NCBI RefSeq assembly: GCF_964188315.1
Contig: NC_135656.1
Span: 107,074,001-107,138,000, forward strand
Reading direction: 5' to 3'
Length of the DNA: 64,000 nucleotides
DNA from: Podarcis muralis
Taxonomy: Eukaryota
This document shows positions 22,560-58,300 of this stretch, in pieces; position 1 is the stretch's first letter; the number at the start of each line of letters is the position of its first letter. The notes beneath the pieces were generated by a model, which made no database searches, was not told the origin of the DNA, and worked only from the letters and a program-made list of their open reading frames with translations. The translations under genes and the position numbers were made by a program.

Positions 22560-23909
22560 CTAACTCCAGCTAGGATCGTAGCCTGTCCAGTCCGAAGGAG
22601 GTGCTAAGTAAACGCGGCGGCCTCTGAAGAGGAAACTGACGATGCCCTGGTAGCCGGCACGGGGCACTCCGGACTTGAGGTCGTCCATGACCCCTAAGGC
22701 CTTGGCGAAGGCCTTGAAGGAGTCGCGAGTGGTGTACTGCACTCGGACAGTGCCCAGCTCCCGGCGCTGGTTACCCTGCAGCTCCTCGACCCGTAGCTCA
22801 GGGGCCCCGTAGACCTGGGCTAGGAATGAGCGCTCGTACTCATCCTTCTTGAGGTAAGAGAGGTCCATCTGGGTGAAAGGCACGAAGCGGTCGTTGAGCT
22901 TGATGAACTTCAGGTACTGGTCAAAGAACTGACCGTGGCTCACGCCCTTGCGGCCAAACGTCATGGTGCGCGACACTTCGGGCCTGATGCACGAACGGCC
23001 CTGCCGTTGCTCAGGGTGTCGCATCCAATCATCCCAGAAGGCCTTGGGCCACTTGGGCTCCAGCTCGTCCCACAGGTCGGACAGCAGGAGCCAGCCCAGC
23101 CCGGGGAAAAAATCCGTACGGTAGAGGAGCTCCGGGTGGTTGGCGTCCACCATTTGCTCCTTGCCGTTGTCGTTCCAGGCGGAGAGACACCAAAGGGTGG
23201 GGTCGGCTAGCAGGAGCGGGAAAGCGGCCTGGAAGTATTCAAAGAAGTCTGGAGCAACTTCCAGGTCATCTTCCACCACAATGGCCGCCTGGTACTTGAA
23301 GTTCCGGAAAACCTGGCTCAAGGCCCAGCGATAGTGCCGGGCGATCTTGTAGTAGCCTTGGAACTTGCGGTGGTCGGTGGGCACAGGGATGTCGCTCAGG
23401 TTGGGCTGTTTGATGTGCATGATGGCGTCTCCATAGGAGGCGATGACCCTGGCGGTCTCCTCGTGTCCGCAGTCCTGGCTCACGATGATGGGGAAGCGCT
23501 CCTTGGAGGGGCGGTAATGCAGCAGCTTGTCGAGGCAGCGGCGGACTGTGCTGCGGTCGCAGGCAATCACCAGCACTGGCAGGACGGCGTCTGGAGAGAT
23601 TTGGCTGCGACGGGGCAAGGGGGCGGCTGTCGAAGGCGGGGTGGAGGACGCCACTGAGAGGTGGAGCCTTTTGGCTTCAGTAGCCTTCCTCCTGTTCCAG
23701 AGAGCGCTGTAGCGGTAGATCTGATGCAGGAGGTCCTTCTGGCGCTCCAGCTCCACCTCTGCGTCCTGGGCCAGTCGGATGACCTCTTCGGTGAGGCGGC
23801 TGTGGTCAGAGGAGGACTGAGGCCGAGTCCACAGGAAGAAGAGGATCAGGGCGTTCCAGGCCACAAAAAGCACCACGCCCCAGAGAACCAGGTTGCTTTT
23901 CTTCAGCAT
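22560..23909 (-). CDS. MGAT1: Alpha-1,3-mannosyl-glycoprotein 2-beta-N-acetylglucosaminyltransferase (GnT-I, GT13), 449 aa, single coding exon
   Basis: Type II membrane anchor MLKKSNLVLWGVVLFVAWNALILFFLW; PVLVIACDRSTVRRCLDKLL; EDD motif VVEDDLEVAPDFFEYF; SAWNDNG; FPGLGW; C-terminus GYDPSWS. Acceptor (ctacttgtgtgcAG) 79 nt upstream of the ATG. Confidence 0.98.
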   Translation of the reverse strand: MLKKSNLVLWGVVLFVAWNALILFFLWTRPQSSSDHSRLTEEVIRLAQDAEVELERQKDLLHQIYRYSALWNRRKATEAKRLHLSVASSTPPSTAAPLPRRSQISPDAVLPVLVIACDRSTVRRCLDKLLHYRPSKERFPIIVSQDCGHEETARVIASYGDAIMHIKQPNLSDIPVPTDHRKFQGYYKIARHYRWALSQVFRNFKYQAAIVVEDDLEVAPDFFEYFQAAFPLLLADPTLWCLSAWNDNGKEQMVDANHPELLYRTDFFPGLGWLLLSDLWDELEPKWPKAFWDDWMRHPEQRQGRSCIRPEVSRTMTFGRKGVSHGQFFDQYLKFIKLNDRFVPFTQMDLSYLKKDEYERSFLAQVYGAPELRVEELQGNQRRELGTVRVQYTTRDSFKAFAKALGVMDDLKSGVPRAGYQGIVSFLFRGRRVYLAPPSDWTGYDPSWS

Positions 23910-24153
23910 CCTTCACAGGCGCAGGCCCCCACCCTGTCTTCTCGTGCTCGCTTTCCCCTCCGATGGGCGTCACAACGCCACCATGGACCTGCACACAAGT
24001 AGGGGGGAAATAAAAGGGTGTTAGGGGAGGCCACAATATGTTCCATCGGTTTTTCTCCTCCTTCCTTGCCCTCAGTGATGTGGGTTTTCCAAACACTAAA
24101 ATCCTACGCAAATTAAGATAATTTGCTTGGAGGCAAGTTCTGATACCTTAGAG

Positions 24154-24289
24154 CAGTGTTCCCCAACCTTGGGCCTCCAGCTGTTTTTGGACTACAATTC
24201 CCATCATCCTTGACCACTGGTCTTGCTAGCGAGGGATGATGGGAGTTGCAGTCCAAAAACAGCTGGAGGCCCAAGGTTGGGGAACACTG
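24154..24289. mobile_element. Palindromic hAT-type MITE in the MGAT1 5' intron
   Basis: cagtgttccccaacc...ggttggggaacactg; perfect TSD ccttagag. Confidence 0.9.
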
Positions 24290-33525: not shown

Positions 33526-33661
33526 NNNNNNNNNNNNNNNNNNNNNNNNNNNNNNNNNNNNNNNNNNNNNNNNNNNNNNNNNNNNNNNNNNNNNNNNNNN
33601 NNNNNNNNNNNNNNNNNNNNNNNNNNNNNNNNNNNNNNNNNNNNNNNNNNNNNNNNNNNNN
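33526..33661. other. Assembly gap (136 N)
   Basis: Run of n. Confidence 0.99.
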
Positions 33662-34784
33662 AGCAAGGGCAGCATGGTGGAAGGCAAAGAAAGGGAGCTG
33701 TGGAATGAGAACTATGGACATTTCTGGTATGGGCTTTTATCTGCCTGGAGTCTCATTTTTATTTTCCAATGGTCACTGAGACACATCATGTGCAAACAAA
33801 CCAGAGGGTGATGATGGGAAGAGAAGGCTTCACCATCCATGGGATGCAGTTGTGGGTTTAACCTTTAATAACTAGCAATACTTAGAACTTCTTTCAAGAC
33901 TTACTAGTCAGTGTTCCAGGTCTTATTCTACAACTTACAGCAAGCTGTGCTGTTCATAACCCAATCTGCTAGATGGGTGAAATTTGAAAGAGTGTCTGCA
34001 TGGTTACCTGCCGTCTCCTGCATGTACTGGCACTAACTGGTGTTAACTTTCGGTATCTTTCCTGGCACCAAATTTCTCCTTGTCGATCTTCTCCAAATTC
34101 TGAACACTGTATTTGAGTTTTTGCATAACAAACAAATGGGTCGAAATAAATGTTCTACAGGTTTGCATTTTTCCTGGGGTAAAACCGAAAGAGCTTTGCT
34201 ATGAACACCAAGGCAGTAGCCACAGGAACAACAGCTCAGCAGATGTTTTGCATAGAAGAAGCTCCAGGTGCCATCCTCCGTAGCTCCAACTGAAAGGCAG
34301 CACTAGGAAAGATCTGAGACACTGGAGAGCTGATGCTAGTTTGAGTAGACAGCCCTGGCCAAATAGACCTTTGGATGGACTCAGTGTAAGTCAGTTTCAT
34401 ATGTTCAAGAGAAAGGGAAACTAGGACATATGAAAAGGAATGGAACTAAAGATGGAAGACAAGGGGCAGCTCCTAAGCAGTAGACGTCCTACTCAAGGGG
34501 GCCAATTCAACTCACAGTCATTTTATATTTCTTTAGAACAGTGGCTTATGAACTGCAGGAAAGATTGGGTGGGAAGTAGGTGGAAAACCTGGAAGAGGAC
34601 AAAAATGTCCAGGGAAGACTGAGAAAACTGTTCCCTTCCTCTGCCTACCAGCCAAGAGGATCCTTTCTGAGTAATCCTGGACTGAGGGATGCCTTCTCTT
34701 AAATTTACATCATCATCCCAATCAGATTTGGGAAAAGTAGCTTTAGAAGTGATCACAGAGGTGTCTTATTCTACTCCTTTTCTA

Positions 34785-34845: not shown

Positions 34846-35911
34846 TATGTCACGTGAGTGTCATGTGTCCTTCACAGATCTTTGTACTGTGCTGAAGGGC
34901 TGCTGTGCACTCTACTGTAGAGCAGAGCATTAGCATTGGGTAAGCTGAGGCTAGGGGCAGAATGTAGGGTAAGCTGAGCAGGCAGGTTCAAAAAGTTTGC
35001 TAAGCCACCTCAAATGCAAGAATATAAAGCAAGTTCTTAAACTGTTGTCCTGCACTACAACACTGGAAACCACAGAAGCATTAAAGCATCCCCTTGTGCC
35101 AGATTCAGAATAAGCACTGAGAAAGGGCCAAATTACAGAAGGCAGGAATTAGAAGGCAGAGAAGTGACAGGGAAAGAGCAACAAAGCGAAAGGGGATAAT
35201 GTCTAAGCAGGGGAATTCTACTCAGGTGACAAAACATCCTCTAAAATGGATGGAGAACCTCAGATGTGTAGGACAGATCCCACCTCTTTCCATTTCAATT
35301 CCAGGCTCTAATCAAAGTTGTCCATTAAGATAATTTAGGGAACACAGGTGGAGAATAAATTTAGAATTCTTCTAGGGAGGCAAAAAAAAAAAAAGGGAGG
35401 AGGGATAATACGCCCCTCCACAACCAATAAAAATGTTAAGAGCCCTGACTATATCAGGCTAAAAGACCATCTACTCCAGCAACCTGCTCTCACTGTAGTC
35501 AACCAAATGTTTATGGGATGCCTCCAATAGTGCCCTCCCCACTTGCAGCTTCCAGCAACTAGCATTCAGGGGACTATTGCTCCCAAAGTGGTGGAATAAC
35601 ATAGCCATTGTGCATAGTAGCCACCAAATTTGTCTATACTGTGAGCAGGAGTTTTGATTCCCCCCCCCTATAGGTTTGTTTAATAAGTAAGGGGTGAGAA
35701 AGCAACAGTTATTCTATGCAAACATATGCAAGCTTGCAGGTAAAGCCCTCTTGCTATTTGACATCCTATATACAGCGGTGCCTTGCAAGACGAAAAGAAT
35801 CCGTTCCGCAATTCTCTTCGTCTAGCGGTTTTTTCGTCTTGCGAAGCAACCCTATTAGCGGCTTAGCGCTATTAGCGGTTTAGCGGCTTAGAGGCTATTA
35901 AAGGCTTAGAA

Positions 35912-38015
35912 CAGTGTTTCCCAACCTTTTTTGGGCAAAGGCACACTTGTTTCATGAAAAAAATCTCGAGGCACACCACCATTACAGCCCCGTGACGTCA
36001 GCGCGCAGCGTCACGCCGGGAGGGACGCACGAAAGTGTAAGTTTCAATTTTTCCCCCTCCCCCTTGCCTTCCTTCTGTGCCAACCGCCAAAAAGCCAAGA
36101 AAAAAGCCAAGACTTTAGGGCAGCAGGTCGACACGGAAGAAGCTCCTACCTAAGGACAGGTGCGACGGCCGTGTCCTCTTCTGCCACACTTGGCAGCCCT
36201 GCCTCACGGTCGTGACTCCCACCCTGATTTCTCCCCGCAGGTCGAGCGGCACAGGCAGCCCAATGTGTCCAGCCCAGACACAAGCCCCGCTTCCCCACTC
36301 TAGATCCTGAATGCGACCAAGTGCTCTGGACTCCCAAGCAGGGTGGGAAAGAGGACTCGCATCTGGTAGCCTCCGGGCTCCTCGCCTGCTTGAGGGATGG
36401 CATTGCAGGCAAGCTGCCGGCCGTCGCCATCGCCGCCCCCTCATGCGAGTGGACCTGCCCGGAGTGGTGGGCCGGGGGAGGCTCGCTCTCTGTGGGGATG
36501 TGGCCCGCACGCGCGGCCCCGCTTCCTCCTGCCCAGGGCTGAGCTCCTTACCCGCGATCTCGGTCTCGCGCACGCGGATCCCACTTATTCTGAAGCTCGC
36601 GCCACTAGCCGGGGCTCTCACACCGTGCCAGGGCGAGGCGGCGCGGCCCACTGACGTCATCGCGGCTCGCCGCCGCCCTCGACTTCCCTGTTCCCTCCCC
36701 TCCCTCGGGTCGCCGTGGTTACCGAGGACTGCAAGCTGCTCGGGCGAGCGTGGGGCATTAAGTGGGAGAAGGAAAATTAAAATTAAAACTCGCCTGAAGG
36801 CCGCCTCTCCGGATACAGTGGTGCCTCGCAAGACGAAATTAATTCGTTCCGCAAGTCTCTTCGTCTTGCGAGTTTTTCGTCTTGCGATGCACAGTTTCCC
36901 ATAGGAATGCATTGAAAATCAATTAATGCGTTCCTAGGGGAAACCGCCTTCAGACCAGGTCCGGGGACAGTCTGTCCCCCGACCTCTTCTGAAGGCTGGG
37001 GGGGGGGGACAAGGGCTTTTCTTCCCACCCCCAGCATTTTAAAAAACCCCGGGACAGCGGAGGACTTCTCCGCTGTCCGGGGCAATCTTAAAATGCTGGC
37101 GGGCGGCATTTTAAAATCGCCCGGGACAGCGGAGGACTTCTCCGCTGTCCGGGGCGATTTAAAAGCCCCTGGGAAGGCAGGCAGGGGGGACAAAGATTTT
37201 CGCCCCCCGCCCGCCTTCAGAAGAGGTCCTGGACCTCTTCTGAAGGTGGGCGGGGGCGAAAGTCTTTGCTCCCCCCTGCCTGCCTTCCCGGGAGAGCAGA
37301 GAAAGGCAGCGCGTTTAACCGCTGTCCCGGATGGCTTTAGAAGGTCCTTGACCTCTTCTGAAGGCGGGCGGGGGCGAAAGCCTTTGCTCCCCCCTGCCTG
37401 CCTTCCCGGGAGAGCGGAGAAAGGCAGCGCGTTTCTCTGCTGTCCCGGACGGCTTTTGAAGGCAGGCTTTTGAAAGCCGTCCGGGACAGCGGAGAAACGC
37501 AGCGCGCCCTTGCCGCTGCCCCCCGACTTGGCTGGAAGGCTGGCGGGGGGAGAAGCCTGCTCCTCCCCATCGCCAGCCCCGCAAACTCGGGGGACAGCGG
37601 GAGAGGCGCAGCGCGCCCTTGCCGCTCCCCCCCGACTTGGCTGGAAGGCTGGCGGGGGGAGAAGCCTGCTTCTCCCCATCGCCAGCCCCGCAAACTCGGG
37701 GGACAGCGGGAGAGGCACAGCGCGCCATCCCGCTGTCTCCCGACATGGTTTGGAGGCTGGCGGAGGGCTTCCTCCTCCCCCAGCCCTGCAAGCTCCCAGA
37801 GCGATGCCAAAGCTGCGCGCAGCTTCGGCATGGCTCTGGGTCCCGTTCTGGGGGAGGGGGAAGCTCGGGCTTCCCCCGCCCCAGCCCCACGCCTGGCGGT
37901 GGGGGAATAATTTTTTTCCCCTTTATTCCCCCCCCCCGCCAATTTTTCCCGCGGCACACCAGGCAACGTCTCGCGGCACACTAGTGTGCCGCGGAACACC
38001 GGTTGGGAAACACTG
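35912..38015. mobile_element. Non-autonomous hAT-type element (2104 bp) with heterologous cargo
   Basis: TIRs cagtgtttcccaacc / ggttgggaaacactg; perfect 8-bp TSD gcttagaa at 35904-35911 and 38016-38023; no recognisable transposase inside. Confidence 0.85.
36816..37800 (+). mobile_element. Left arm and GC-rich interior of a second Tigger-like element inside the hAT (no right TIR); includes a 109-bp tandem repeat (~2.3 copies, 37500-37745)
   Basis: TA-cagtggtgcctcgcaagacgaaattaattcg at 36814; hairpin repeats ccgggacagcggaggacttctccgctgtccgggg; repeat units start at 37500, 37609 and 37718. Right boundary approximate. Confidence 0.7.
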
Positions 38016-38849
38016 GCTTAGAAGCTTAGCTGCTAAAAGGCTATTAGCAGCTTAGAAAAAGGGGGGGGGGAGCGGGGGGAAAATCGCAAGACTAGCAAGA
38101 CGTTTCGTCTTGCGAAGCAAGCCCATAGGGAAAATCGTCTTGCGAAGCAACTCAAAAATGGAAAACCCTTTCGTCTAGCGGGTTTTCCGTCTTGTGAGGC
38201 ATTCGTCTTGCGGGGCACCACTGTACCTTAGGATCAGGGCAGCTTACACCATACTAAGTAGCAGTACAGTCAAATACCACCATCCCCATAACCTGAGCAG
38301 AATCTGCCCCCTTCCTTCCCCTTCAGAATCCTCAAACAGGATGCATTTTAAAGAGGTGCAGCAGCAGCACAATCCCAATTACCGTAAATATCCTTCTGCC
38401 AACTTCTACTACTTTCATGTGTGTGTGTGATGGTGGTGAATGACCCCTTGCCTAATGCAAAATCGTTGCTCCAATTCAACTTCCCCCTTTCTTGTCTTAT
38501 CTTCCAAACACTCCTTCCTTTCCCAATTACTTGACGAACTCCACTGACCTCAGATTCTGCTTTCCAAACACAACATCCTCTATAAAATTAGCATGAGGAC
38601 TCCTCATACCCTAAAAAACCACCGCAGAGCAACTCATTCTTTCCCCACCACTAAAATGAAGTGGGATGAAGTTTGGATTGTGAAATATGTGCTTTTTCAA
38701 AATGTAACGTGTGCCAGGTCTATAAAACCTTTTAAAGGACCTTCAGCATGAACGCAAATATATACACAGAATACACACACCTACAGAAGCTACAAAAGTG
38801 ATCCAATGTCCCCAAGGGATCTGGATTTAATTTGTCACTAGGGGTCCAG

Positions 38850-50395: not shown

Positions 50396-50755
50396 AAAAA
50401 GGTAAAGGTACTCCTGCCCGTATGGGCCAGTCTTGACAGACTCTAGGGTTGTGCGCCCATCTCACTTAAGAGGCCGGGGGCCAGCGCTGTCCGGAGACAC
50501 TTCCGGGTCACGTGGCCAGCGTGACATCGCTGCTCTGGCGAGCCAGAGCCGCACACGGAAACACCGTTTACCTTCCCGCCAGTAAGCGGTCCCTATTTAT
50601 CTACTTGCACCCGGAGGTGCTTTCGAACTGCTAGGTTGGCAGGCGCTGGGACTGAGCAACGGGAGCGCACCCCGCCGCGGGGATTCGAACCGCCGACCTT
50701 TCGATCGGCAAGCCCTAGGCGCTGAGGCTTTTACCCACAGCGCCACCCGCGTCCC
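50396..50755 (-). mobile_element. Sauria SINE
   Basis: Full body; TSD taagatacaagct / taagacacaagct with one mismatch. Confidence 0.9.
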
Positions 50756-51024
50756 TTAAGACACAAGCTTACACACCTGAATTTTAAAGAAACAAAAACG
50801 TGAGAACGGTGGTATAGTCGTAATGGGTTATTAGGTCAAGTAATACTAATAAGGAGTGGCAGAAGTGGACAATTGGTGAGCCAAGGTTGGATCACAGTTA
50901 ATATAAGACACAATGTGACATGCTAATAATGTACGTAACTGCCTGCTGTCTTTCTCCTCATACTATGTAATGAGCTGAGCTTGACTGAAAAAGTTGAGCT
51001 TGAATCTTAGCAAGAAAAAGGCAC

Positions 51025-52180: not shown

Positions 52181-55028
52181 TATAAATTGTTGTTAAATAA
52201 ATATGTCTAGTGTGGCTCTATCTATGCATTCTGCTGCATTTTAAGGATATGCACCCTTAATAAAGGAATCTGACCCCAGTATTAGTCTAGGACATGGATG
52301 GAGAACTTTGATCACACCAGCAAAACAACTTCCTGTGCCAGATGTGTGCACCCTATTTGCCTGTTTCAGTTTCAAGCAACTTACTGCAATTTGCACACTG
52401 TTTTCTCAAACCTGAAACCTGCCACATTACAGTGGGCAGACACCTCTTCATCAAACCATGTGCTGGTTTTGGAGTGGCTATCCTCATGTACAAAAGCAGA
52501 AGTTACTTGAACAATCCTCCCATGGCTTGCCTTCTCATTTCCCAACCTGCTCTTACTATTTGGCTAGCCTTGTAAATAGTTAGCATTGGCTGTCTGGGTT
52601 GAGGAAGATTTGCCACCCAATAGGGAAACAGGGAATGAACCCTTTCAGATTGCCAGTATGCCAGTAAAGGACTAATAGTCACCAAGCTGGCAAGTAATTT
52701 TTGTGAACCACTTTAAGGTGATGTGCAACACTTGCTAATAACCAAGATTATTGGTCAGGAATACTATTGTCTGCTGGAAGCCTCAGGAAGGTTTAAAAAT
52801 AGTGTTTGTTTTTTAAAGCAACACAGAATGAAACAGGACCCATTATAGGCCCCCATTCTTTTGTCATCTTATTATGGGGTGCTATTCCATTTCATTTTAC
52901 ACTTGCAAGCTACATTTCTCCCTGTGCTTTATTCTATCTACCTTCAGCAGCTGCCTCTCTTTCTAGGGCACGTTTTAAGATGAATAGAGACATCCACAAA
53001 GGTTGAGCATCAAAAGAAGGGAAGAAATGTCATGCCTGACTCCAGGAGAGAGATGGTATGCTTTGCAGCAGACTGCCACTGAGCCAGAAGAGAAATAAAA
53101 TGGACATGGAAGATCAAACAGCAAATATAGGGCAGGATTGTTAGCATACCTGCATTTAACAGAAAGAATAAAAATGAGAGAGGCGTAGATAAAACGGTTC
53201 CAATACCTTGAGCGATTTTAAAAACTGGACCCTAAAGAGATACTTTTGGCACTGTATTGATTTGGGACATCTAGCCTTTAAGCCACTGCACTTGCCTCTC
53301 CTACCCCACTGCCAAATCACAAATGAGAATTGCTGCCTTTTCCCTCCGCACCCAACTGTCATCACATCCCAATCCAAGCTCCCCAGGACAGAACAAGTAG
53401 CAGCCCCCCCCGGCTCCCCCCTTCCTCCCCAGCATGCCTCTTCTGCACCCCCCTCTCCTCTCAATTTCCATCCAACGTCGCCTCCCTACACCAACATCCT
53501 TCTCTCCCCTTTTGCGGGGCTCCCTCCAGAAAATGAGGATATATTTGGCTCAGGGAGACTCTCCTTGCCTCCAGCTGGGACTTACTGATTTAATTCCCCC
53601 CCCTTTGCCCCCCCTCCTGTCTGGACACCCCTCCCCCCAGCACCCACTCCTCTTCCTGCAGTCCCTTTTCCTTTCCTTTCCTTTTTCCTTTCCTTCCCTC
53701 TCTCTCCTTCTGCCAGGATCCCTCTTCCATTCTCTCCTTCCTAGAGCAGACTCCCTCCCACCAAGGGCTTCTGTAGCGCTTTCAGGCAGCTTAGTTTGCA
53801 GTGATGGAAAGGGAGATGCAGTCAGGTCTCACTTTGGAAAAGCAGTGCCAGGGCTGTGGGAGCATCCAAGAGCCCTTACACTGCCTTCTCAAAATCAGGC
53901 AGGCTTTGGGGAGGTGGCAGGGTCCACTCAAAACAACAACAACAACAACAACTCTGTCCAGATTTTCAATTTTGAAAATATGGCAACCCTAGTTAACTGC
54001 TATGTGGGAACTCATTCCCAGCCATTCCGTGAGAAAATGAAAGCCTTTCGGGGCAAAAGGTCATCACAACAACAGGGTTATAAAGTCATATGCTCAAAGT
54101 CATAAGCCATGACAAAGGCAATGAAATTTCTCTGGTAATAAACTTGGTTATCTCAAATGCAAAGCTAACTTGTCAACAAGCCACCTTCCCACTGATTTCA
54201 ATATTTATTTATTAAATTTGTATACTGCTTTTCATCTGTAGTTCTTAGGGAGCTTCATAACATAAAAATGCAAGATGCACATCCAAATAAGTGACCTTGA
54301 TAAAATTTTAATACTTCTTTTAAAACGGCCAATTTTAAAGATAAGTGATAGTTGATGCATGGCACTCCTACATCTAAAAAATGTAAGCTGGGGAAAGTTT
54401 GATCCACCTCCCCCACTTCCACAACAGACCCATGCTCAATGAGTCCCCACCTACCTTTTTCTCAGAAGCAGGCACAAAAAGCTCCTTATATTTTTAAACG
54501 CAAGTATAGCGTGTAAGACAACTCCCATGATGACATGTGTGCAGATGTTGTATCCACTTTGTGAAAGACTCAAGACTCCAAGAAGTCACCTAATTAAAAA
54601 GAAAAAGTAAGTCTGATATTTGCTGCCAAAGAAAAATTCAAATATAACTCGTATAGGTTGATGTTCCGTTAGGATCTGTGTACTGCACCATGGATAGATG
54701 AGGCACGGCACGAAGGTTTTAGGTTTAATAAAAAATAAAATAAAAACACAAAGTCAGATTCTTTTTCAGATGTGCCAACATTTCTACACAACAGCAGCCA
54801 CTGAGGGTTCCTAAATACCTGACAATATGCCAGAGACTAAACAAAAAAGAACCCCTGTGTTGCGAACAGAACAATCTGACAACCCAAAAGCAACACGGTA
54901 GGCTAATAATATAATTACAATACTTTTGTATCACAATTGAATTATGTCTTAATTGACAATCAGATAACGTACAATATATACATGGTGACACCAACATATG
55001 TATCCTGTGTACCCTTTTGGACGTTTTA

Positions 55029-55376
55029 CAGTGGTGCCTCGCAAGACGAAATTAATTCGCTCCGCGAGTTTTGTCGTCTTGCGATTTTTTTCGTCTTGCG
55101 AAGCACGGTGTCGGGAAAGTTTTGGAAAAGCTTCAAAAATCACCAAAGTCTTTAAAAACCTCAAAAAAGGTTACCACACTGCGTTCTATGAGTTGCTCCT
55201 CGAAGTCAAGTCGCAACTGTATTAACGGTGTTAAGAAAAAGGAAACAAGCTTGCAAGACGTTTCCGTCTTGCGAAGCAAGCCCATAGGAAAAATCGTCTT
55301 GCGAAGCAGCTCAAAAAACCCTTTTGTCTAGCGAGTTTTTTGTCTTCCGAGGCATTCGTCTTGCGAGGTACCACTG
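55029..55376. mobile_element. Tigger/pogo-like MITE
   Basis: TA-cagtggtgcctcgcaagacg...cgtcttgcgaggtaccactg-TA. Confidence 0.88.
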
Positions 55377-58300
55377 TACTTGGTAATGTATCTCTTATTG
55401 TGTAATAACCATTTACAGAATGTTCAGGTATATCATCTCATTTATTGTATTTGAATGTAACTGATTCTATTTGGTATTATTATCAGCTGAGGAAGAACAT
55501 TGATTGAAACAGTCAGTCATCCTGGAAGGACTGTCTTGTCGCTGTGTTTGGAGCACCAACGTTCTTCAGCTTACTCTCTACAAATACTGCATATTTGCCT
55601 CAAGCTTTAGTGATTCTTCGTGACGTTACACAGCCTAAAAACCCCTTATTTTGGGACATTTTCTTAACTCACCTTAGCTGGTGTCACCATGTATATATTT
55701 TACGTTATCTGATTGCCAATTAAGACAGAATTCAGTAGTGATACCAAAGTATTGTAATTATATTATTAGCCTACTGTGTTGCTTTTGGATTGTCAGTCAA
55801 TATGTCAGAGACTTACATTCACACATGATGCCTCCCCCATGATTCTTAAAAGCCCCATCTTTGACTGACATCCTCTTGGTTTCCAGGCTTATCCACTGAA
55901 GCCTCGAAACCTAGAGAAAGTTTTTTTCAGAATGATAGACTAATCCAACAGATTCCAGCCTTGCCTGGTTAGAACTGTCATGCTTACCAAGTGACAGACC
56001 AAAGGCCAACCAACAGCCTATCTGATAATAGTCTCCAATTGTGGCTAAGCATTCCATATGAAAAATAATGCCAATGTGAAACTGGCATTCTTGCAACAGC
56101 ACCATCCATTTGCAATGGCAGGAGTAAGGTCTCCTTGCTGCCCAGCCATGCACCCCACCCTTCCTATACAATCTGCCACCATCTGCCCTGTAACTCTCCC
56201 TCCAGTTCTACTGCCACAATTAAAACGACACAGCTTCTCTCACTGACATATCTGAACAGAAATAAGGAGAGAGAGGTTAGGAGCAAAACAAAAAGGAACA
56301 CACAAGCAGTTGCAGAGGGGACGAGTCTAGTGCTGCCAACTAGAGAGAATTTTACGGGCTTGGCCAATTGCCATCACGAGAGAACGCAAAGCCAAAAAGT
56401 TCCAGCTGAGCAGTTTGTGCTATTATTGTGCCCATGTGCGCCGTTATAGCAAGCGCTGAGGCATCACATGGGGGCAGTAACTGCATTTGTAGTGGGGTAC
56501 ACATGTGAAAGCACTGAAAGCTTTGTGCTGCTACTGCAATGAACACTGTATTGCTCCGTTCAGCTCTGCCTCTCAATACGAGGCTATCAGGGAAGTGGCA
56601 GGCACCATTTTGTAGAGTGCACCTGGAGAGACCACATGAGTATGTACATAGTGGTTGTCTAGATGGGTAAAGGTAAGTCAGCAAGTGCAGCAGAGGGGCC
56701 CATCCCCTCCCCCTCAGCTGAACCACCATCTCACACAGTTGTGAGGCTGCAGTCCCTGGAGGCAGGAGAGAGGAAGTCACCAAATTACACAATCCCCCCC
56801 AGACAGGGAAACATTATCCTCACAAAGGAAAGGCCATCTGAACGTGCTTGGGAGCACACTTGCCCTTGAGCCCTTATCTGAAAGAATTTCAGGTGGGGAT
56901 GAACATTGAGACGGGGAAGTTGGCCATTCTCCAAGGCGCTCACTTAAGCAAAACACAGCGCAGGCCACAAGTGTCCTGAAGTCAAGATTATTACCAAGGT
57001 AACTGCATTTGGGGTGGTGAGGAAGGTGCTCAATTTCCATTCCATATTTTCTCCAGGAGTTCAGAACTACAGCGTTCACCACACCTTTCATTTGCTTGCC
57101 ACCCTTTGAGGGAGGTTAGATGGAGAGATAGTACTGGGAAACCTTGGGCTAGTCACTTTTTGGCGGAGCTGCTTTTTGAAGCTGGGCCTCCCTGTTCTAC
57201 GAACGAAACTCTAGCTGTTACATCACACTAACCTGGCGTGCTGACTTGTAAAGGTTTTAAGTCAGGGGTGCCCAAACGTTTTTCAAGGGGGGCCAGATTT
57301 GATGAAGTGAACATGTATGAGGGCCACCCACCCAAAGTTGTTGAGTTTTTTTTAGGATTTACCCCAGGACATATACTGCCACAGGGCCCAGATTAATTTG
57401 GCCGGCGGTCCAGATTAGGGTCCCAAAGTGGACTTTGGATGTGTCTGTTGTAAGTAGAATAGAAATCTGCTGGCTTCTAGAAGGCAGACATTTCTGCAAT
57501 TAGCAGTTCTGCTACTCTTCCTAAAAACAAGCTCTTAAAATATGTTATCAGTATTACACAGACTCTTTTCTACTACCAGTCAAATGGTAACCAGAATTCT
57601 CAACAGAGCCAGCCAAGGTTTCTAGATCTGCAGATCAGAGCAATCTGTCAGAAAACACGTGTCTGCCCTTTGCAAGGTTTCTTAGATTCTGCCAAGCAAC
57701 AGAGACTTAATTGAATGGCTTTCAATATTTAACACTAATGAAAAGAGTTCTTCCCCAGAACACAGAAGCCATCGCTGAGTTCTGAACACTCATTCAAGTC
57801 AGTCTCAGCTGAACTCTGAATCAGATCACCTCACAGAATGTAAGATGGCCAGCAGCTTAAATGGCTTTTTAAAATGCCCAAACCAATTTACAGAGGATAG
57901 GCCTATCAATCACTGTTAGCCATGAAAGCTAAAATGAAAGTACCACAGATGGAGGCCGTACAGATCTGAATACCAGTTGCTGGAGGGTAAATCATAGAGA
58001 GAGCCATCACATTCATGACTTGTTAGTGGCTGATTCCTGTTAGAAACATCTGGCTGATTCCTGTTAGAAAGTGAATGCCAAGGAATTCTTGTAGGTCTAA
58101 TGAGAGATTGAGATGTTTCTACCTGCAATCTTGTTAGATTCTACAGGCCAGGCCCCATTGTGACTTCTTCCTGAGGTGAGGACACTACAGAATAGGGATG
58201 GAAAATCCCAGTGTTATTGGGCTACAACTCCTGGCCTGGGGCTGATGGGAGTAGGAGCCCAAAAACATATGGAAAGCTACAGGCTTCCCATTCCAGCGCA

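What the first reader, a model, noticed from the sequence alone, without database searches (positions are those of the whole stretch)
36146..36700. The cargo looks like a portable promoter plus first exons aimed at MGAT1
Seen on the minus strand: perfect CRE TGACGTCA (36652-36659); a short GC-rich exon ending in a strong donor cgcgg|GTAAGG (36551); a 97-nt intron-like segment; an acceptor at 36455; a strong-Kozak ATG (ggcggcgATGg, 36430) opening 94 codons; and a second donor ttag|GTAGGA (36149). Orientation matches MGAT1, whose acceptor is 12.6 kb downstream. This is the strongest CpG island in the 40 kb upstream of that housekeeping gene. Inference: a captured gene 5' end that may now serve as an alternative MGAT1 promoter.
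Basis: partly seen in the sequence, partly recalled or inferred. Interest (0 to 1): 0.7.

Follow-up and report, generated by a model that had tools for sequence, protein, structure and literature searches.

The report
Young hAT transposon copy, not MGAT1 promoter
The CpG-rich stretch upstream of the lizard MGAT1 gene is the middle of a recently inserted, many-copy cut-and-paste (hAT) transposon, and nothing in the RNA data shows that this copy starts MGAT1 transcripts.

Summary
The splice-like sites are no more than chance gives, and RNA does not treat them as exons.

The stretch is the ~745-nt interior (36070-36815) of a non-autonomous hAT element (35912-38015). That element has perfect 15-nt TIRs and an 8-nt target duplication, and sits inside a Tc1/mariner MITE. 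A second copy (L002) shows the normal ~1-kb family form. The window copy carries an extra 1.1 kb of repeats between one arm and the interior.

The interior runs to tens to hundreds of copies. A related species has a precise empty site lacking the whole nest, so this cannot be an ancestral MGAT1 promoter.

Family RNA is strand-biased but flat across the "promoter", "exon 1", "intron" and "exon 2". All 52 and 59 reads at two diagnostic sites carry the family letter, not this copy's. Four of five differences between copies are CpG transitions, which suggests methylation.

The 94-codon ORF has no relatives and the donor gene was not found. The junction to MGAT1 could not be tested.

The scan has already reported gene-start-carrying hAT elements elsewhere in this genome, so this is one more member.

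The parts
35773..35903 (+). Outer Tc1/mariner MITE, left part. The TA target copy is at 35771-35772 and the TIR begins CAGCGGTGCC.
   Evidence: The TIR matches the full 352-nt copy at 55027-55378. Other copies of this MITE in four runs join about 35909 to about 38024 without the hAT (table 5).
35904..35911 (.). hAT target-site duplication, copy 1 (GCTTAGAA on +, TTCTAAGC on -).
   Evidence: Read. It is identical to 38016-38023.
35912..36069 (-). hAT arm next to the interior: the 15-nt TIR at 35912-35926, subterminal GTGTGCC repeats, and a TGACGTCA of its own at 35993-36000.
   Evidence: Depth in organism B is about 245,000 against 10-14 in single-copy flank. A contig leaves the window sequence near 36044-36069 into a different interior (tables 2 and 7).
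36070..36815 (-). Family interior (the 'cargo'), CpG-island-like, holding every motif of the finding.
   Evidence: GC 0.645, CpG o/e 0.81. It is 99.4% identical to L002 over 819 nt. One organism-B contig covers 36131-36815 at depth 593, against 8-15 in the flank.
36652..36659 (.). Palindromic CRE-like octamer TGACGTCA.
36146..36430 (-). 94-codon ORF. Its stop lies in the second donor-like site.
   Evidence: No Pfam family, no word-search hit, and only chance hits summed over repeats in the exhaustive search.
36816..37939 (.). Secondary insertion private to this copy: a mariner end (36816 to about 36925) followed by GC-rich palindromic and tandem repeats with 109- and 118-nt periods. It replaces 15 nt that L002 has at this point.
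   Evidence: Contigs of X14 and X17 stop matching at 36815 (table 8).
37940..38015 (-). The other hAT arm, with the TIR at 38001-38015.
   Evidence: 73 of 75 nt identical to L002 1-75. TIR.
38016..38023 (.). hAT target-site duplication, copy 2.
38024..38223 (+). Outer mariner MITE, right part. The TA is at 38224-38225.
   Evidence: The organism-B contig resumes at 38224 (record 10).
22560..23988 (-). MGAT1 coding exon from its acceptor, given for reference. The ORF is 22560-23909.
   Evidence: It is colinear with the Zootoca vivipara MGAT1 locus.

Best explanation
Positions 36146-36700 are part of the ~745-nt interior of one copy of a young, multi-copy, non-autonomous hAT transposon of the 'Pack' kind: the same arms carry foreign GC-rich middles.

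Shown:
- The element (35912-38015) inserted into a Tc1/mariner MITE and made an 8-nt target duplication.
- This copy also carries a 1.1-kb repeat insertion between one arm and the interior.
- The whole nest is missing at the same site in a related species.

Inferred:
- The interior is a piece of a CpG-island region, probably near a promoter, from a host locus not yet identified. It would have been copied into the element during repair of an excision gap or by template switching, and then spread by transposition.
- This copy is a silent, probably methylated passenger lying upstream of, or in the first intron of, MGAT1.
- The splice-like sites and the ORF are incidental.
For: **Structure**
- Perfect 15-nt TIRs at 35912 and 38015, and an 8-nt duplication TTCTAAGC.
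- Three 136-nt MITEs with the same TIR in the window. The two whose flanks are clear (24154, 46877) have 8-nt duplications.
- Mariner copies in other runs are continuous across the hAT insertion point (joints 35909->38024 and neighbours).

**Family**
- L002 has arm + 15 nt + interior + arm, with 5 substitutions in 819 nt.
- The interior contig in organism B has depth 593, against 8-15 for the flank.
- In organism A only 0.3-0.6% of the depth carries this copy's letters at 36336 and 36391.

**Age**
- The organism-B contig joins 35762 to 38224 (record 10).

**No coding content**
-.

**RNA (X23)**
- Depth is 39-61 in one direction and 4.5-18 in the other, flat from 36047 to 36772.
- The bin that is mostly 'intron' is the highest, at 60.7.
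- 0 of 52 and 0 of 59 reads carry this copy's letters.
- Unique flanks have almost no reads.

**Substitutions**
- 4 of 5 differences between copies are CpG transitions.
Against: - No donor locus was found, so 'captured host sequence' rests on composition and on analogy with other members reported by the scan. Those reports are unchecked notes.
- Only one other copy was seen base by base. The copy numbers come from contig depths, which the tool warns are poor measures.
- The strand-biased RNA over the interior is not explained.
- RNA came from one run of unknown tissue, of which 12% was read. The animal's genotype at this insertion is unknown.
- 'Exon 1' has no diagnostic letter, so direct splicing from 36552 to MGAT1 is not excluded.
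Confidence: 0.8

Rival explanations
1. One reading: the cargo is a working portable promoter with first exons, and at this site it provides an alternative first exon that splices to the MGAT1 acceptor at 23988.
For: - It has the same orientation as MGAT1.
- Its composition is CpG-island-like, with a CRE and GC boxes.
- There is a good donor-like site at 36551.
- Family RNA is biased in the direction that fits the minus strand in most stranded libraries.
- No other non-repeat CpG island lies in the 40 kb of window upstream of MGAT1.
Against: - The insertion is absent in a related species.
- RNA depth is as high over the 'promoter' (39) and the 'intron' (60.7) as over the 'exons'.
- No intron joint is among those listed.
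- 0 of 52 and 0 of 59 reads carry this copy's letters.
- There is no excess depth over 'exon 1'.
- The copies show CpG-decay substitutions.
- One such donor-like site per interior is what chance gives.
- With tens to hundreds of copies, a same-orientation neighbour gene is expected.
Confidence: 0.04
2. The interior is not from a promoter or a gene start. It would be a piece of a long transcribed exon or lncRNA, or internal sequence of another repeat, and it is merely GC- and CpG-rich.
For: - RNA coverage is flat and strand-biased over all 745 nt, including the part upstream of the proposed start.
- No coding exon is recognisable.
- No donor gene was found.
Against: - CpG o/e reaches 1.15 at GC 0.70 over 36552-36760, which is typical of islands that are unmethylated in the germline.
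- Earlier scan notes on this genome report that the same kind of element carries the starts of named genes. Those notes are unchecked.
- No match to Rfam or to transposase domains.
Confidence: 0.25
3. The block 35912-38015 is not one mobile unit. It would be a chance pile-up of separate insertions around native DNA, so that the CpG island is resident sequence.
For: A mariner end lies inside the block at 36814, and it is 96% complementary to the end at 38225 (I12). That allows a different parsing of the block.
Against: - The 8-nt duplication flanks perfect TIRs.
- The outer mariner halves are continuous in other copies.
- L002 shows the interior directly between the arms.
- The interior is multi-copy.
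- The related species lacks the whole block precisely at the mariner TA.
Confidence: 0.03

Closest known systems
Pack-TIR / Pack-hAT elements of animals (Tan et al. 2021, Nat Commun 12:4280, PMC8277862); Pack-MULEs of plants
   Same: - It is a non-autonomous TIR element whose middle is non-transposon sequence.
- hAT is the commonest carrier in animals: 208 of 370 cases in that survey.
- Gap-repair or template-switch origin is the model proposed there.
- A frog hAT carrying a 5' UTR piece in three copies is the nearest published case.
   Different: - In that survey only 4 of the animal Pack-TIRs were multi-copy, and the copy numbers were small. Here the depth data suggest tens to hundreds of copies.
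- The parent locus, which defines a Pack element, was not identified here.
Other gene-start-carrying hAT elements noted by this scan in the same genome (RANBP9, PPAT, PRKAR2A and SIX5 cargo; 'same arms, swapped GC-rich interiors')
   Same: - Same genome, same superfamily, GC-rich interior, recent insertion with an empty site in related lizards, multi-copy.
- I saw a contig that shares the arm up to about 36069 and then continues into a different interior (table 7).
   Different: - Those notes name a donor gene with a coding exon. This interior has none that can be recognised.
Transposon-derived alternative promoters, for example MER20 for decidual prolactin (cited within PMC8277862)
   Different: Here there is no start-site signal, no splice junction and no reads from this copy.

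Membership tests
hAT superfamily, non-autonomous element | Short terminal inverted repeats | tested here: met
   A perfect 15-nt CAGTGTTTCCCAACC at 35912-35926 (+) and 38001-38015 (-). There are 8 matches in the window against 0.16 expected.
hAT superfamily, non-autonomous element | 8-bp target-site duplication | tested here: met
   TTCTAAGC at 35904-35911 and 38016-38023. The MITEs with the same TIR at 24154 and 46877 have CCTTAGAG and CTCTAGAG.
hAT superfamily, non-autonomous element | No transposase gene; mobilised in trans | tested here: met
   No Pfam family in any ORF of 35912-38015. The autonomous partner was not looked for.
Pack-TIR (gene-fragment-carrying TIR element) | Interior derived from a host locus that still exists elsewhere (a parent copy without arms) | tested here: inconclusive
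   Protein searches of the ORFs found nothing but another element copy. No tool here searches this lizard genome by DNA.
Pack-TIR (gene-fragment-carrying TIR element) | The loaded element has transposed (several copies, distinct sites, empty sites) | tested here: met
   - A second copy exists (L002).
- Depth is 593 against 8-15 in organism B.
- The nest is missing at a precise empty site in organism B.
- The flanks of other copies were not seen.
Active CpG-island promoter | CpG-island composition | tested here: met
   36070-36813: GC 0.645, o/e 0.81. 36552-36760: GC 0.70, o/e 1.15.
Active CpG-island promoter | Transcripts begin there (a step in coverage, read starts) | tested here: not met
   Depth is 39 upstream of the CRE and 50-61 downstream. 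No place where many molecules begin was found (tables 2 and 6). The bins are 121 nt wide and the copies are pooled.
Active CpG-island promoter | Unmethylated in the germline | not testable with these tools
   Indirect evidence only: 4 of 5 substitutions between two copies are CpG transitions, which suggests methylation.
Alternative first exon of MGAT1 | Reads joining 36552 or 36150 to 23988 | not tested
   The two sides lie 12.6 kb apart.
Alternative first exon of MGAT1 | RNA that comes from this copy | tested here: not met
   At 36336 and 36391 all 52 and 59 RNA reads carry the family letter, not the window's (table 3).
Alternative first exon of MGAT1 | Present in related species (if it were the regular promoter) | tested here: not met
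   The organism-B contig bridges 35762 to 38224 (record 10).

The most novel reading that the evidence does not exclude
The interior is a working, mobile CpG-island promoter. The hAT family would have scattered it to tens or hundreds of sites, where it starts strand-specific transcripts, and a few copies, possibly this one, would feed new first exons to neighbouring genes such as MGAT1. This would be transposon-driven spread of a host promoter in a vertebrate.
Probability: 0.05. Interest if true: 0.65.

Novelty: new member of a known kind. Interest (0 to 1): 0.27.

Why it matters
Multi-copy DNA transposons loaded with host CpG-island sequence are rare in published animal surveys. Tan et al. 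2021 found four multi-copy cases in 100 genomes. This wall-lizard genome seems to hold several such families, and this is one more, with an interior whose origin is unknown. If any of these interiors kept promoter activity, they would be a ready source of new start sites near genes. For this copy the data give no sign of that. Its value is as a dated, nested, recent insertion and as a caution that CpG islands in this genome can be transposon cargo.

Tried and rejected
- **Native MGAT1 exon 1 flanked by insertions.** Rejected because of the target duplication, the second copy L002, the multi-copy depth and the empty site.
- **Identifying the donor.** All searches were blank.
  - Pfam on six-frame ORFs.
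  - Word search with the 265-aa and 94-aa ORFs. The first found only another element copy.
  - Exhaustive HMMER search of the 94-aa ORF. It gave four weak hits whose scores are summed over up to 28 repeated stretches in repetitive proteins. These are chance.
  - Rfam. It gave only sub-threshold hairpin matches in the palindromic repeats at 37000-37500.
  - Earlier findings searched by sequence.
- **Finding the true MGAT1 5' exon through transcript contigs of near-identical MGAT1 proteins**. Only genome records were listed.
- **Reaching the orthologous site in Zootoca**. The 10-kb flank ends at window position 34240, about 1.5 kb short.
- **The other 'CpG island' at 50401-50800 as the real promoter.** It is a tRNA-derived SINE.
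- **Spliced model.** I did not build or search a joined exon1-exon2-MGAT1 model. Only the single ORF was searched, by reference.
- **Run X17.** It is labelled RNA only by guess, and I did not count it as RNA evidence.

Full report
**What is in the sequence**

- TGACGTCA at 36659-36652.
- cgcgg|gtaagg, with the intron G at 36551.
- An AG at 36456-36455, 97 nt downstream.
- An ATG at 36430 opening a 94-codon ORF that stops inside ttag|gtagga at 36149.

The gene downstream is MGAT1. It has a 449-codon ORF at 22560-23909 on the minus strand (Pfam GNT-I, E 3.7e-187). A good acceptor precedes it, and the exon starts at 23988. The exact protein is on record in a lizard assembly, GCA_964188315.1. The scan's earlier notes call that assembly a wall lizard, Podarcis.

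**The surroundings are a nest of transposons**

- A hAT element spans 35912-38015.
  - It has perfect 15-nt inverted ends, CAGTGTTTCCCAACC.
  - It is flanked by an 8-nt duplication, TTCTAAGC, at 35904-35911 and 38016-38023.
- Three 136-nt MITEs with the same ends lie elsewhere in the window. The two whose flanks are clear have 8-nt duplications of the usual hAT kind.
- The hAT sits inside a Tc1/mariner MITE, 35773-38223, flanked by TA on each side. A complete 352-nt relative is at 55027-55378.
- In four sequencing runs, other copies of that MITE run straight across the hAT insertion point. Joints go from 35909 to 38024-38043 (table 5). So the 2104-nt block arrived as one insertion.

**What the normal element looks like**

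The 265-codon ORF that happens to stay open across the stretch found one near-identical product, on a 909-nt public contig, L002.
- That contig starts at the hAT end.
- It shares 73 of 75 nt with the window's arm at 38015-37940.
- It then has 15 nt, and then runs from the TA at 36815 through the whole CpG-rich stretch into the other arm.
- It has 5 substitutions in 819 nt.

So the usual family member is about 1 kb: arm, a ~745-nt interior (36815 to about 36070), arm.

The window's copy has an extra 1124 nt (36816-37939) between one arm and the interior.
- The extra piece is a mariner end followed by GC-rich palindromic and tandem repeats of 109 and 118 nt.
- Contigs of two runs stop matching the window exactly at 36815, as L002 predicts (table 8).
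- The second arm is shared with elements that have other interiors. One contig follows it to about 36069 and then diverges (table 7).

**Copy number and age**

- In a DNA run of another species (organism B), one contig covers 36131-36815 with 3 differences. Its depth is 593, while the unique flanks have depth 8-15. That suggests some tens of copies.
- In a DNA run of the window's species label, only 0.3-0.6% of the depth has this copy's letters at 36336 and 36391. That suggests a hundred or more copies. The tool warns that such depths are rough.
- At 36591 all organism-B depth has C, but only 19% of organism-A depth does. This fits a burst in organism A from a master copy that had lost that CpG.
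- In organism B a contig joins 35762 to 38224, the mariner's TA. Mariner, hAT and inner insertion are therefore all missing at this site (record 10). The nest is younger than that split, or is polymorphic.
- Two of the 136-nt hAT MITEs near the MGAT1 exon are likewise absent in Zootoca vivipara. hAT elements have been active recently in this lineage.

**Is it a gene start?**

The composition fits one:
- GC 0.645 and CpG o/e 0.81 over the interior.
- GC 0.70 and o/e 1.15 over 36552-36760.
- TGACGTCA occurs only twice in the window. One is here and one is in the hAT arm at 35993.

No gene could be attached to it:
- No ORF has a Pfam family.
- The 94-codon ORF has no word-search hit.
- In the exhaustive search it gave only four weak hits, whose scores are summed over many repeats of repetitive proteins.
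- Rfam has nothing in the interior.
- Donor-like sites as good as the one at 36551 occur about twice per kb per strand in this window. One in 745 nt is what chance gives.

I therefore take 'captured CpG-island sequence of a host locus' as the likeliest origin. This rests on composition and on analogy with the other loaded hAT elements that the scan reported in this genome. Those reports are unchecked notes. 'Promoter plus first exons' is not shown.

**Does it serve MGAT1?**

One bulk RNA run of the same species label (X23, raw reads, 12% read) covers the interior.
- Depth is 39-61 in one direction and 4.5-18 in the other. If the library is of the usual stranded kind, the RNA is from the minus strand.
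- The depth is flat: 39 over 36652-36772, upstream of the proposed start, then 50, 61, 53, 54 and 42.
- The highest bin is the one that is mostly the proposed 97-nt intron. There is no drop after the second donor.
- No place where many molecules begin was found, and no joint at the proposed intron is among those listed. The list is truncated.
- At the two positions where this copy differs from the family, all 52 and all 59 reads carry the family letter.
- The unique flanks have almost no reads.

Four of the five substitutions between the window copy and L002 are CpG to TpG or CpA, two on each side. CpG positions make up about 17% of the interior. This is the mark of methylated repeats, not of a protected promoter.

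Limits of this evidence:
- It comes from one run of unknown tissue and unknown genotype.
- 'Exon 1' has no diagnostic letter.
- The junction to 23988 lies 12.6 kb away. It could not be tested within the 6,000-letter limit and the single call.
- I built no joined exon model.

**Where MGAT1 really starts**

This remains open.
- Upstream of the coding exon the window has no other CpG island that is not a repeat.
I did not test it.
- From general knowledge, not tested here, vertebrate MGAT1 has its whole coding region in one exon and non-coding first exons far upstream. If so, the nest may simply lie in its first intron.

**Comparison with what is known**

Tan et al. 2021 (PMC8277862) found 370 Pack-TIR elements in 100 animal genomes. 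Of these, 208 were on hAT elements, nearly all were single-copy, and four were multi-copy. One of those was a frog hAT carrying a 5' UTR piece at three sites.

This element works like those and is more numerous. It fails the one test that would make it a full member, because no parent locus was found.

The scan has already reported the same phenomenon on other DNA of this genome, so this is one further member. Its special claim, a new MGAT1 promoter, is not supported.

The N run at 33526-33661 was left alone.

Noticed in passing
window 20851-20986 and 24154-24289: Two 136-nt hAT MITEs with the same TIR bracket the MGAT1 coding exon. One ends about 165 nt upstream of the acceptor at 23988. Both are absent from the colinear Zootoca vivipara locus L003.
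   Followed up: partly
window 35993-36000: The hAT arm itself carries a perfect TGACGTCA. This is the only other one in the 64 kb, so every element with this arm spreads a CRE-like site.
   Followed up: no
window 36047-36772: RNA over the interior is strand-biased by 3:1 to 11:1 and flat, unlike the two-stranded signal over the neighbouring mariner and hAT ends. The source is not known. It could be the donor locus, a few expressed copies, or a bias in the orientation of copies within genes.
   Followed up: partly
window 36930-37770: GC-rich palindromic units and tandem repeats of 118 and 109 nt. They are very abundant in all the DNA runs and give sub-threshold miRNA-like Rfam hits because of their hairpins. 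They are probably the internal part of a mariner-type repeat subfamily.
   Followed up: partly
window 50401-50800: This block passes CpG-island criteria (GC 0.59, o/e 0.94), but it is a tRNA-derived SINE and not a promoter.
   Followed up: yes
window 23969-23983: A short upstream ORF (atggtggcgttgtga) lies in the MGAT1 leader, between the acceptor and the main ATG at 23909.
   Followed up: no
window 55027-55378: A complete 352-nt Tc1/mariner MITE of the same family as the outer element, with a different middle.
   Followed up: partly
window 33526-33661: A run of 136 N. It was left as it is.
   Followed up: no
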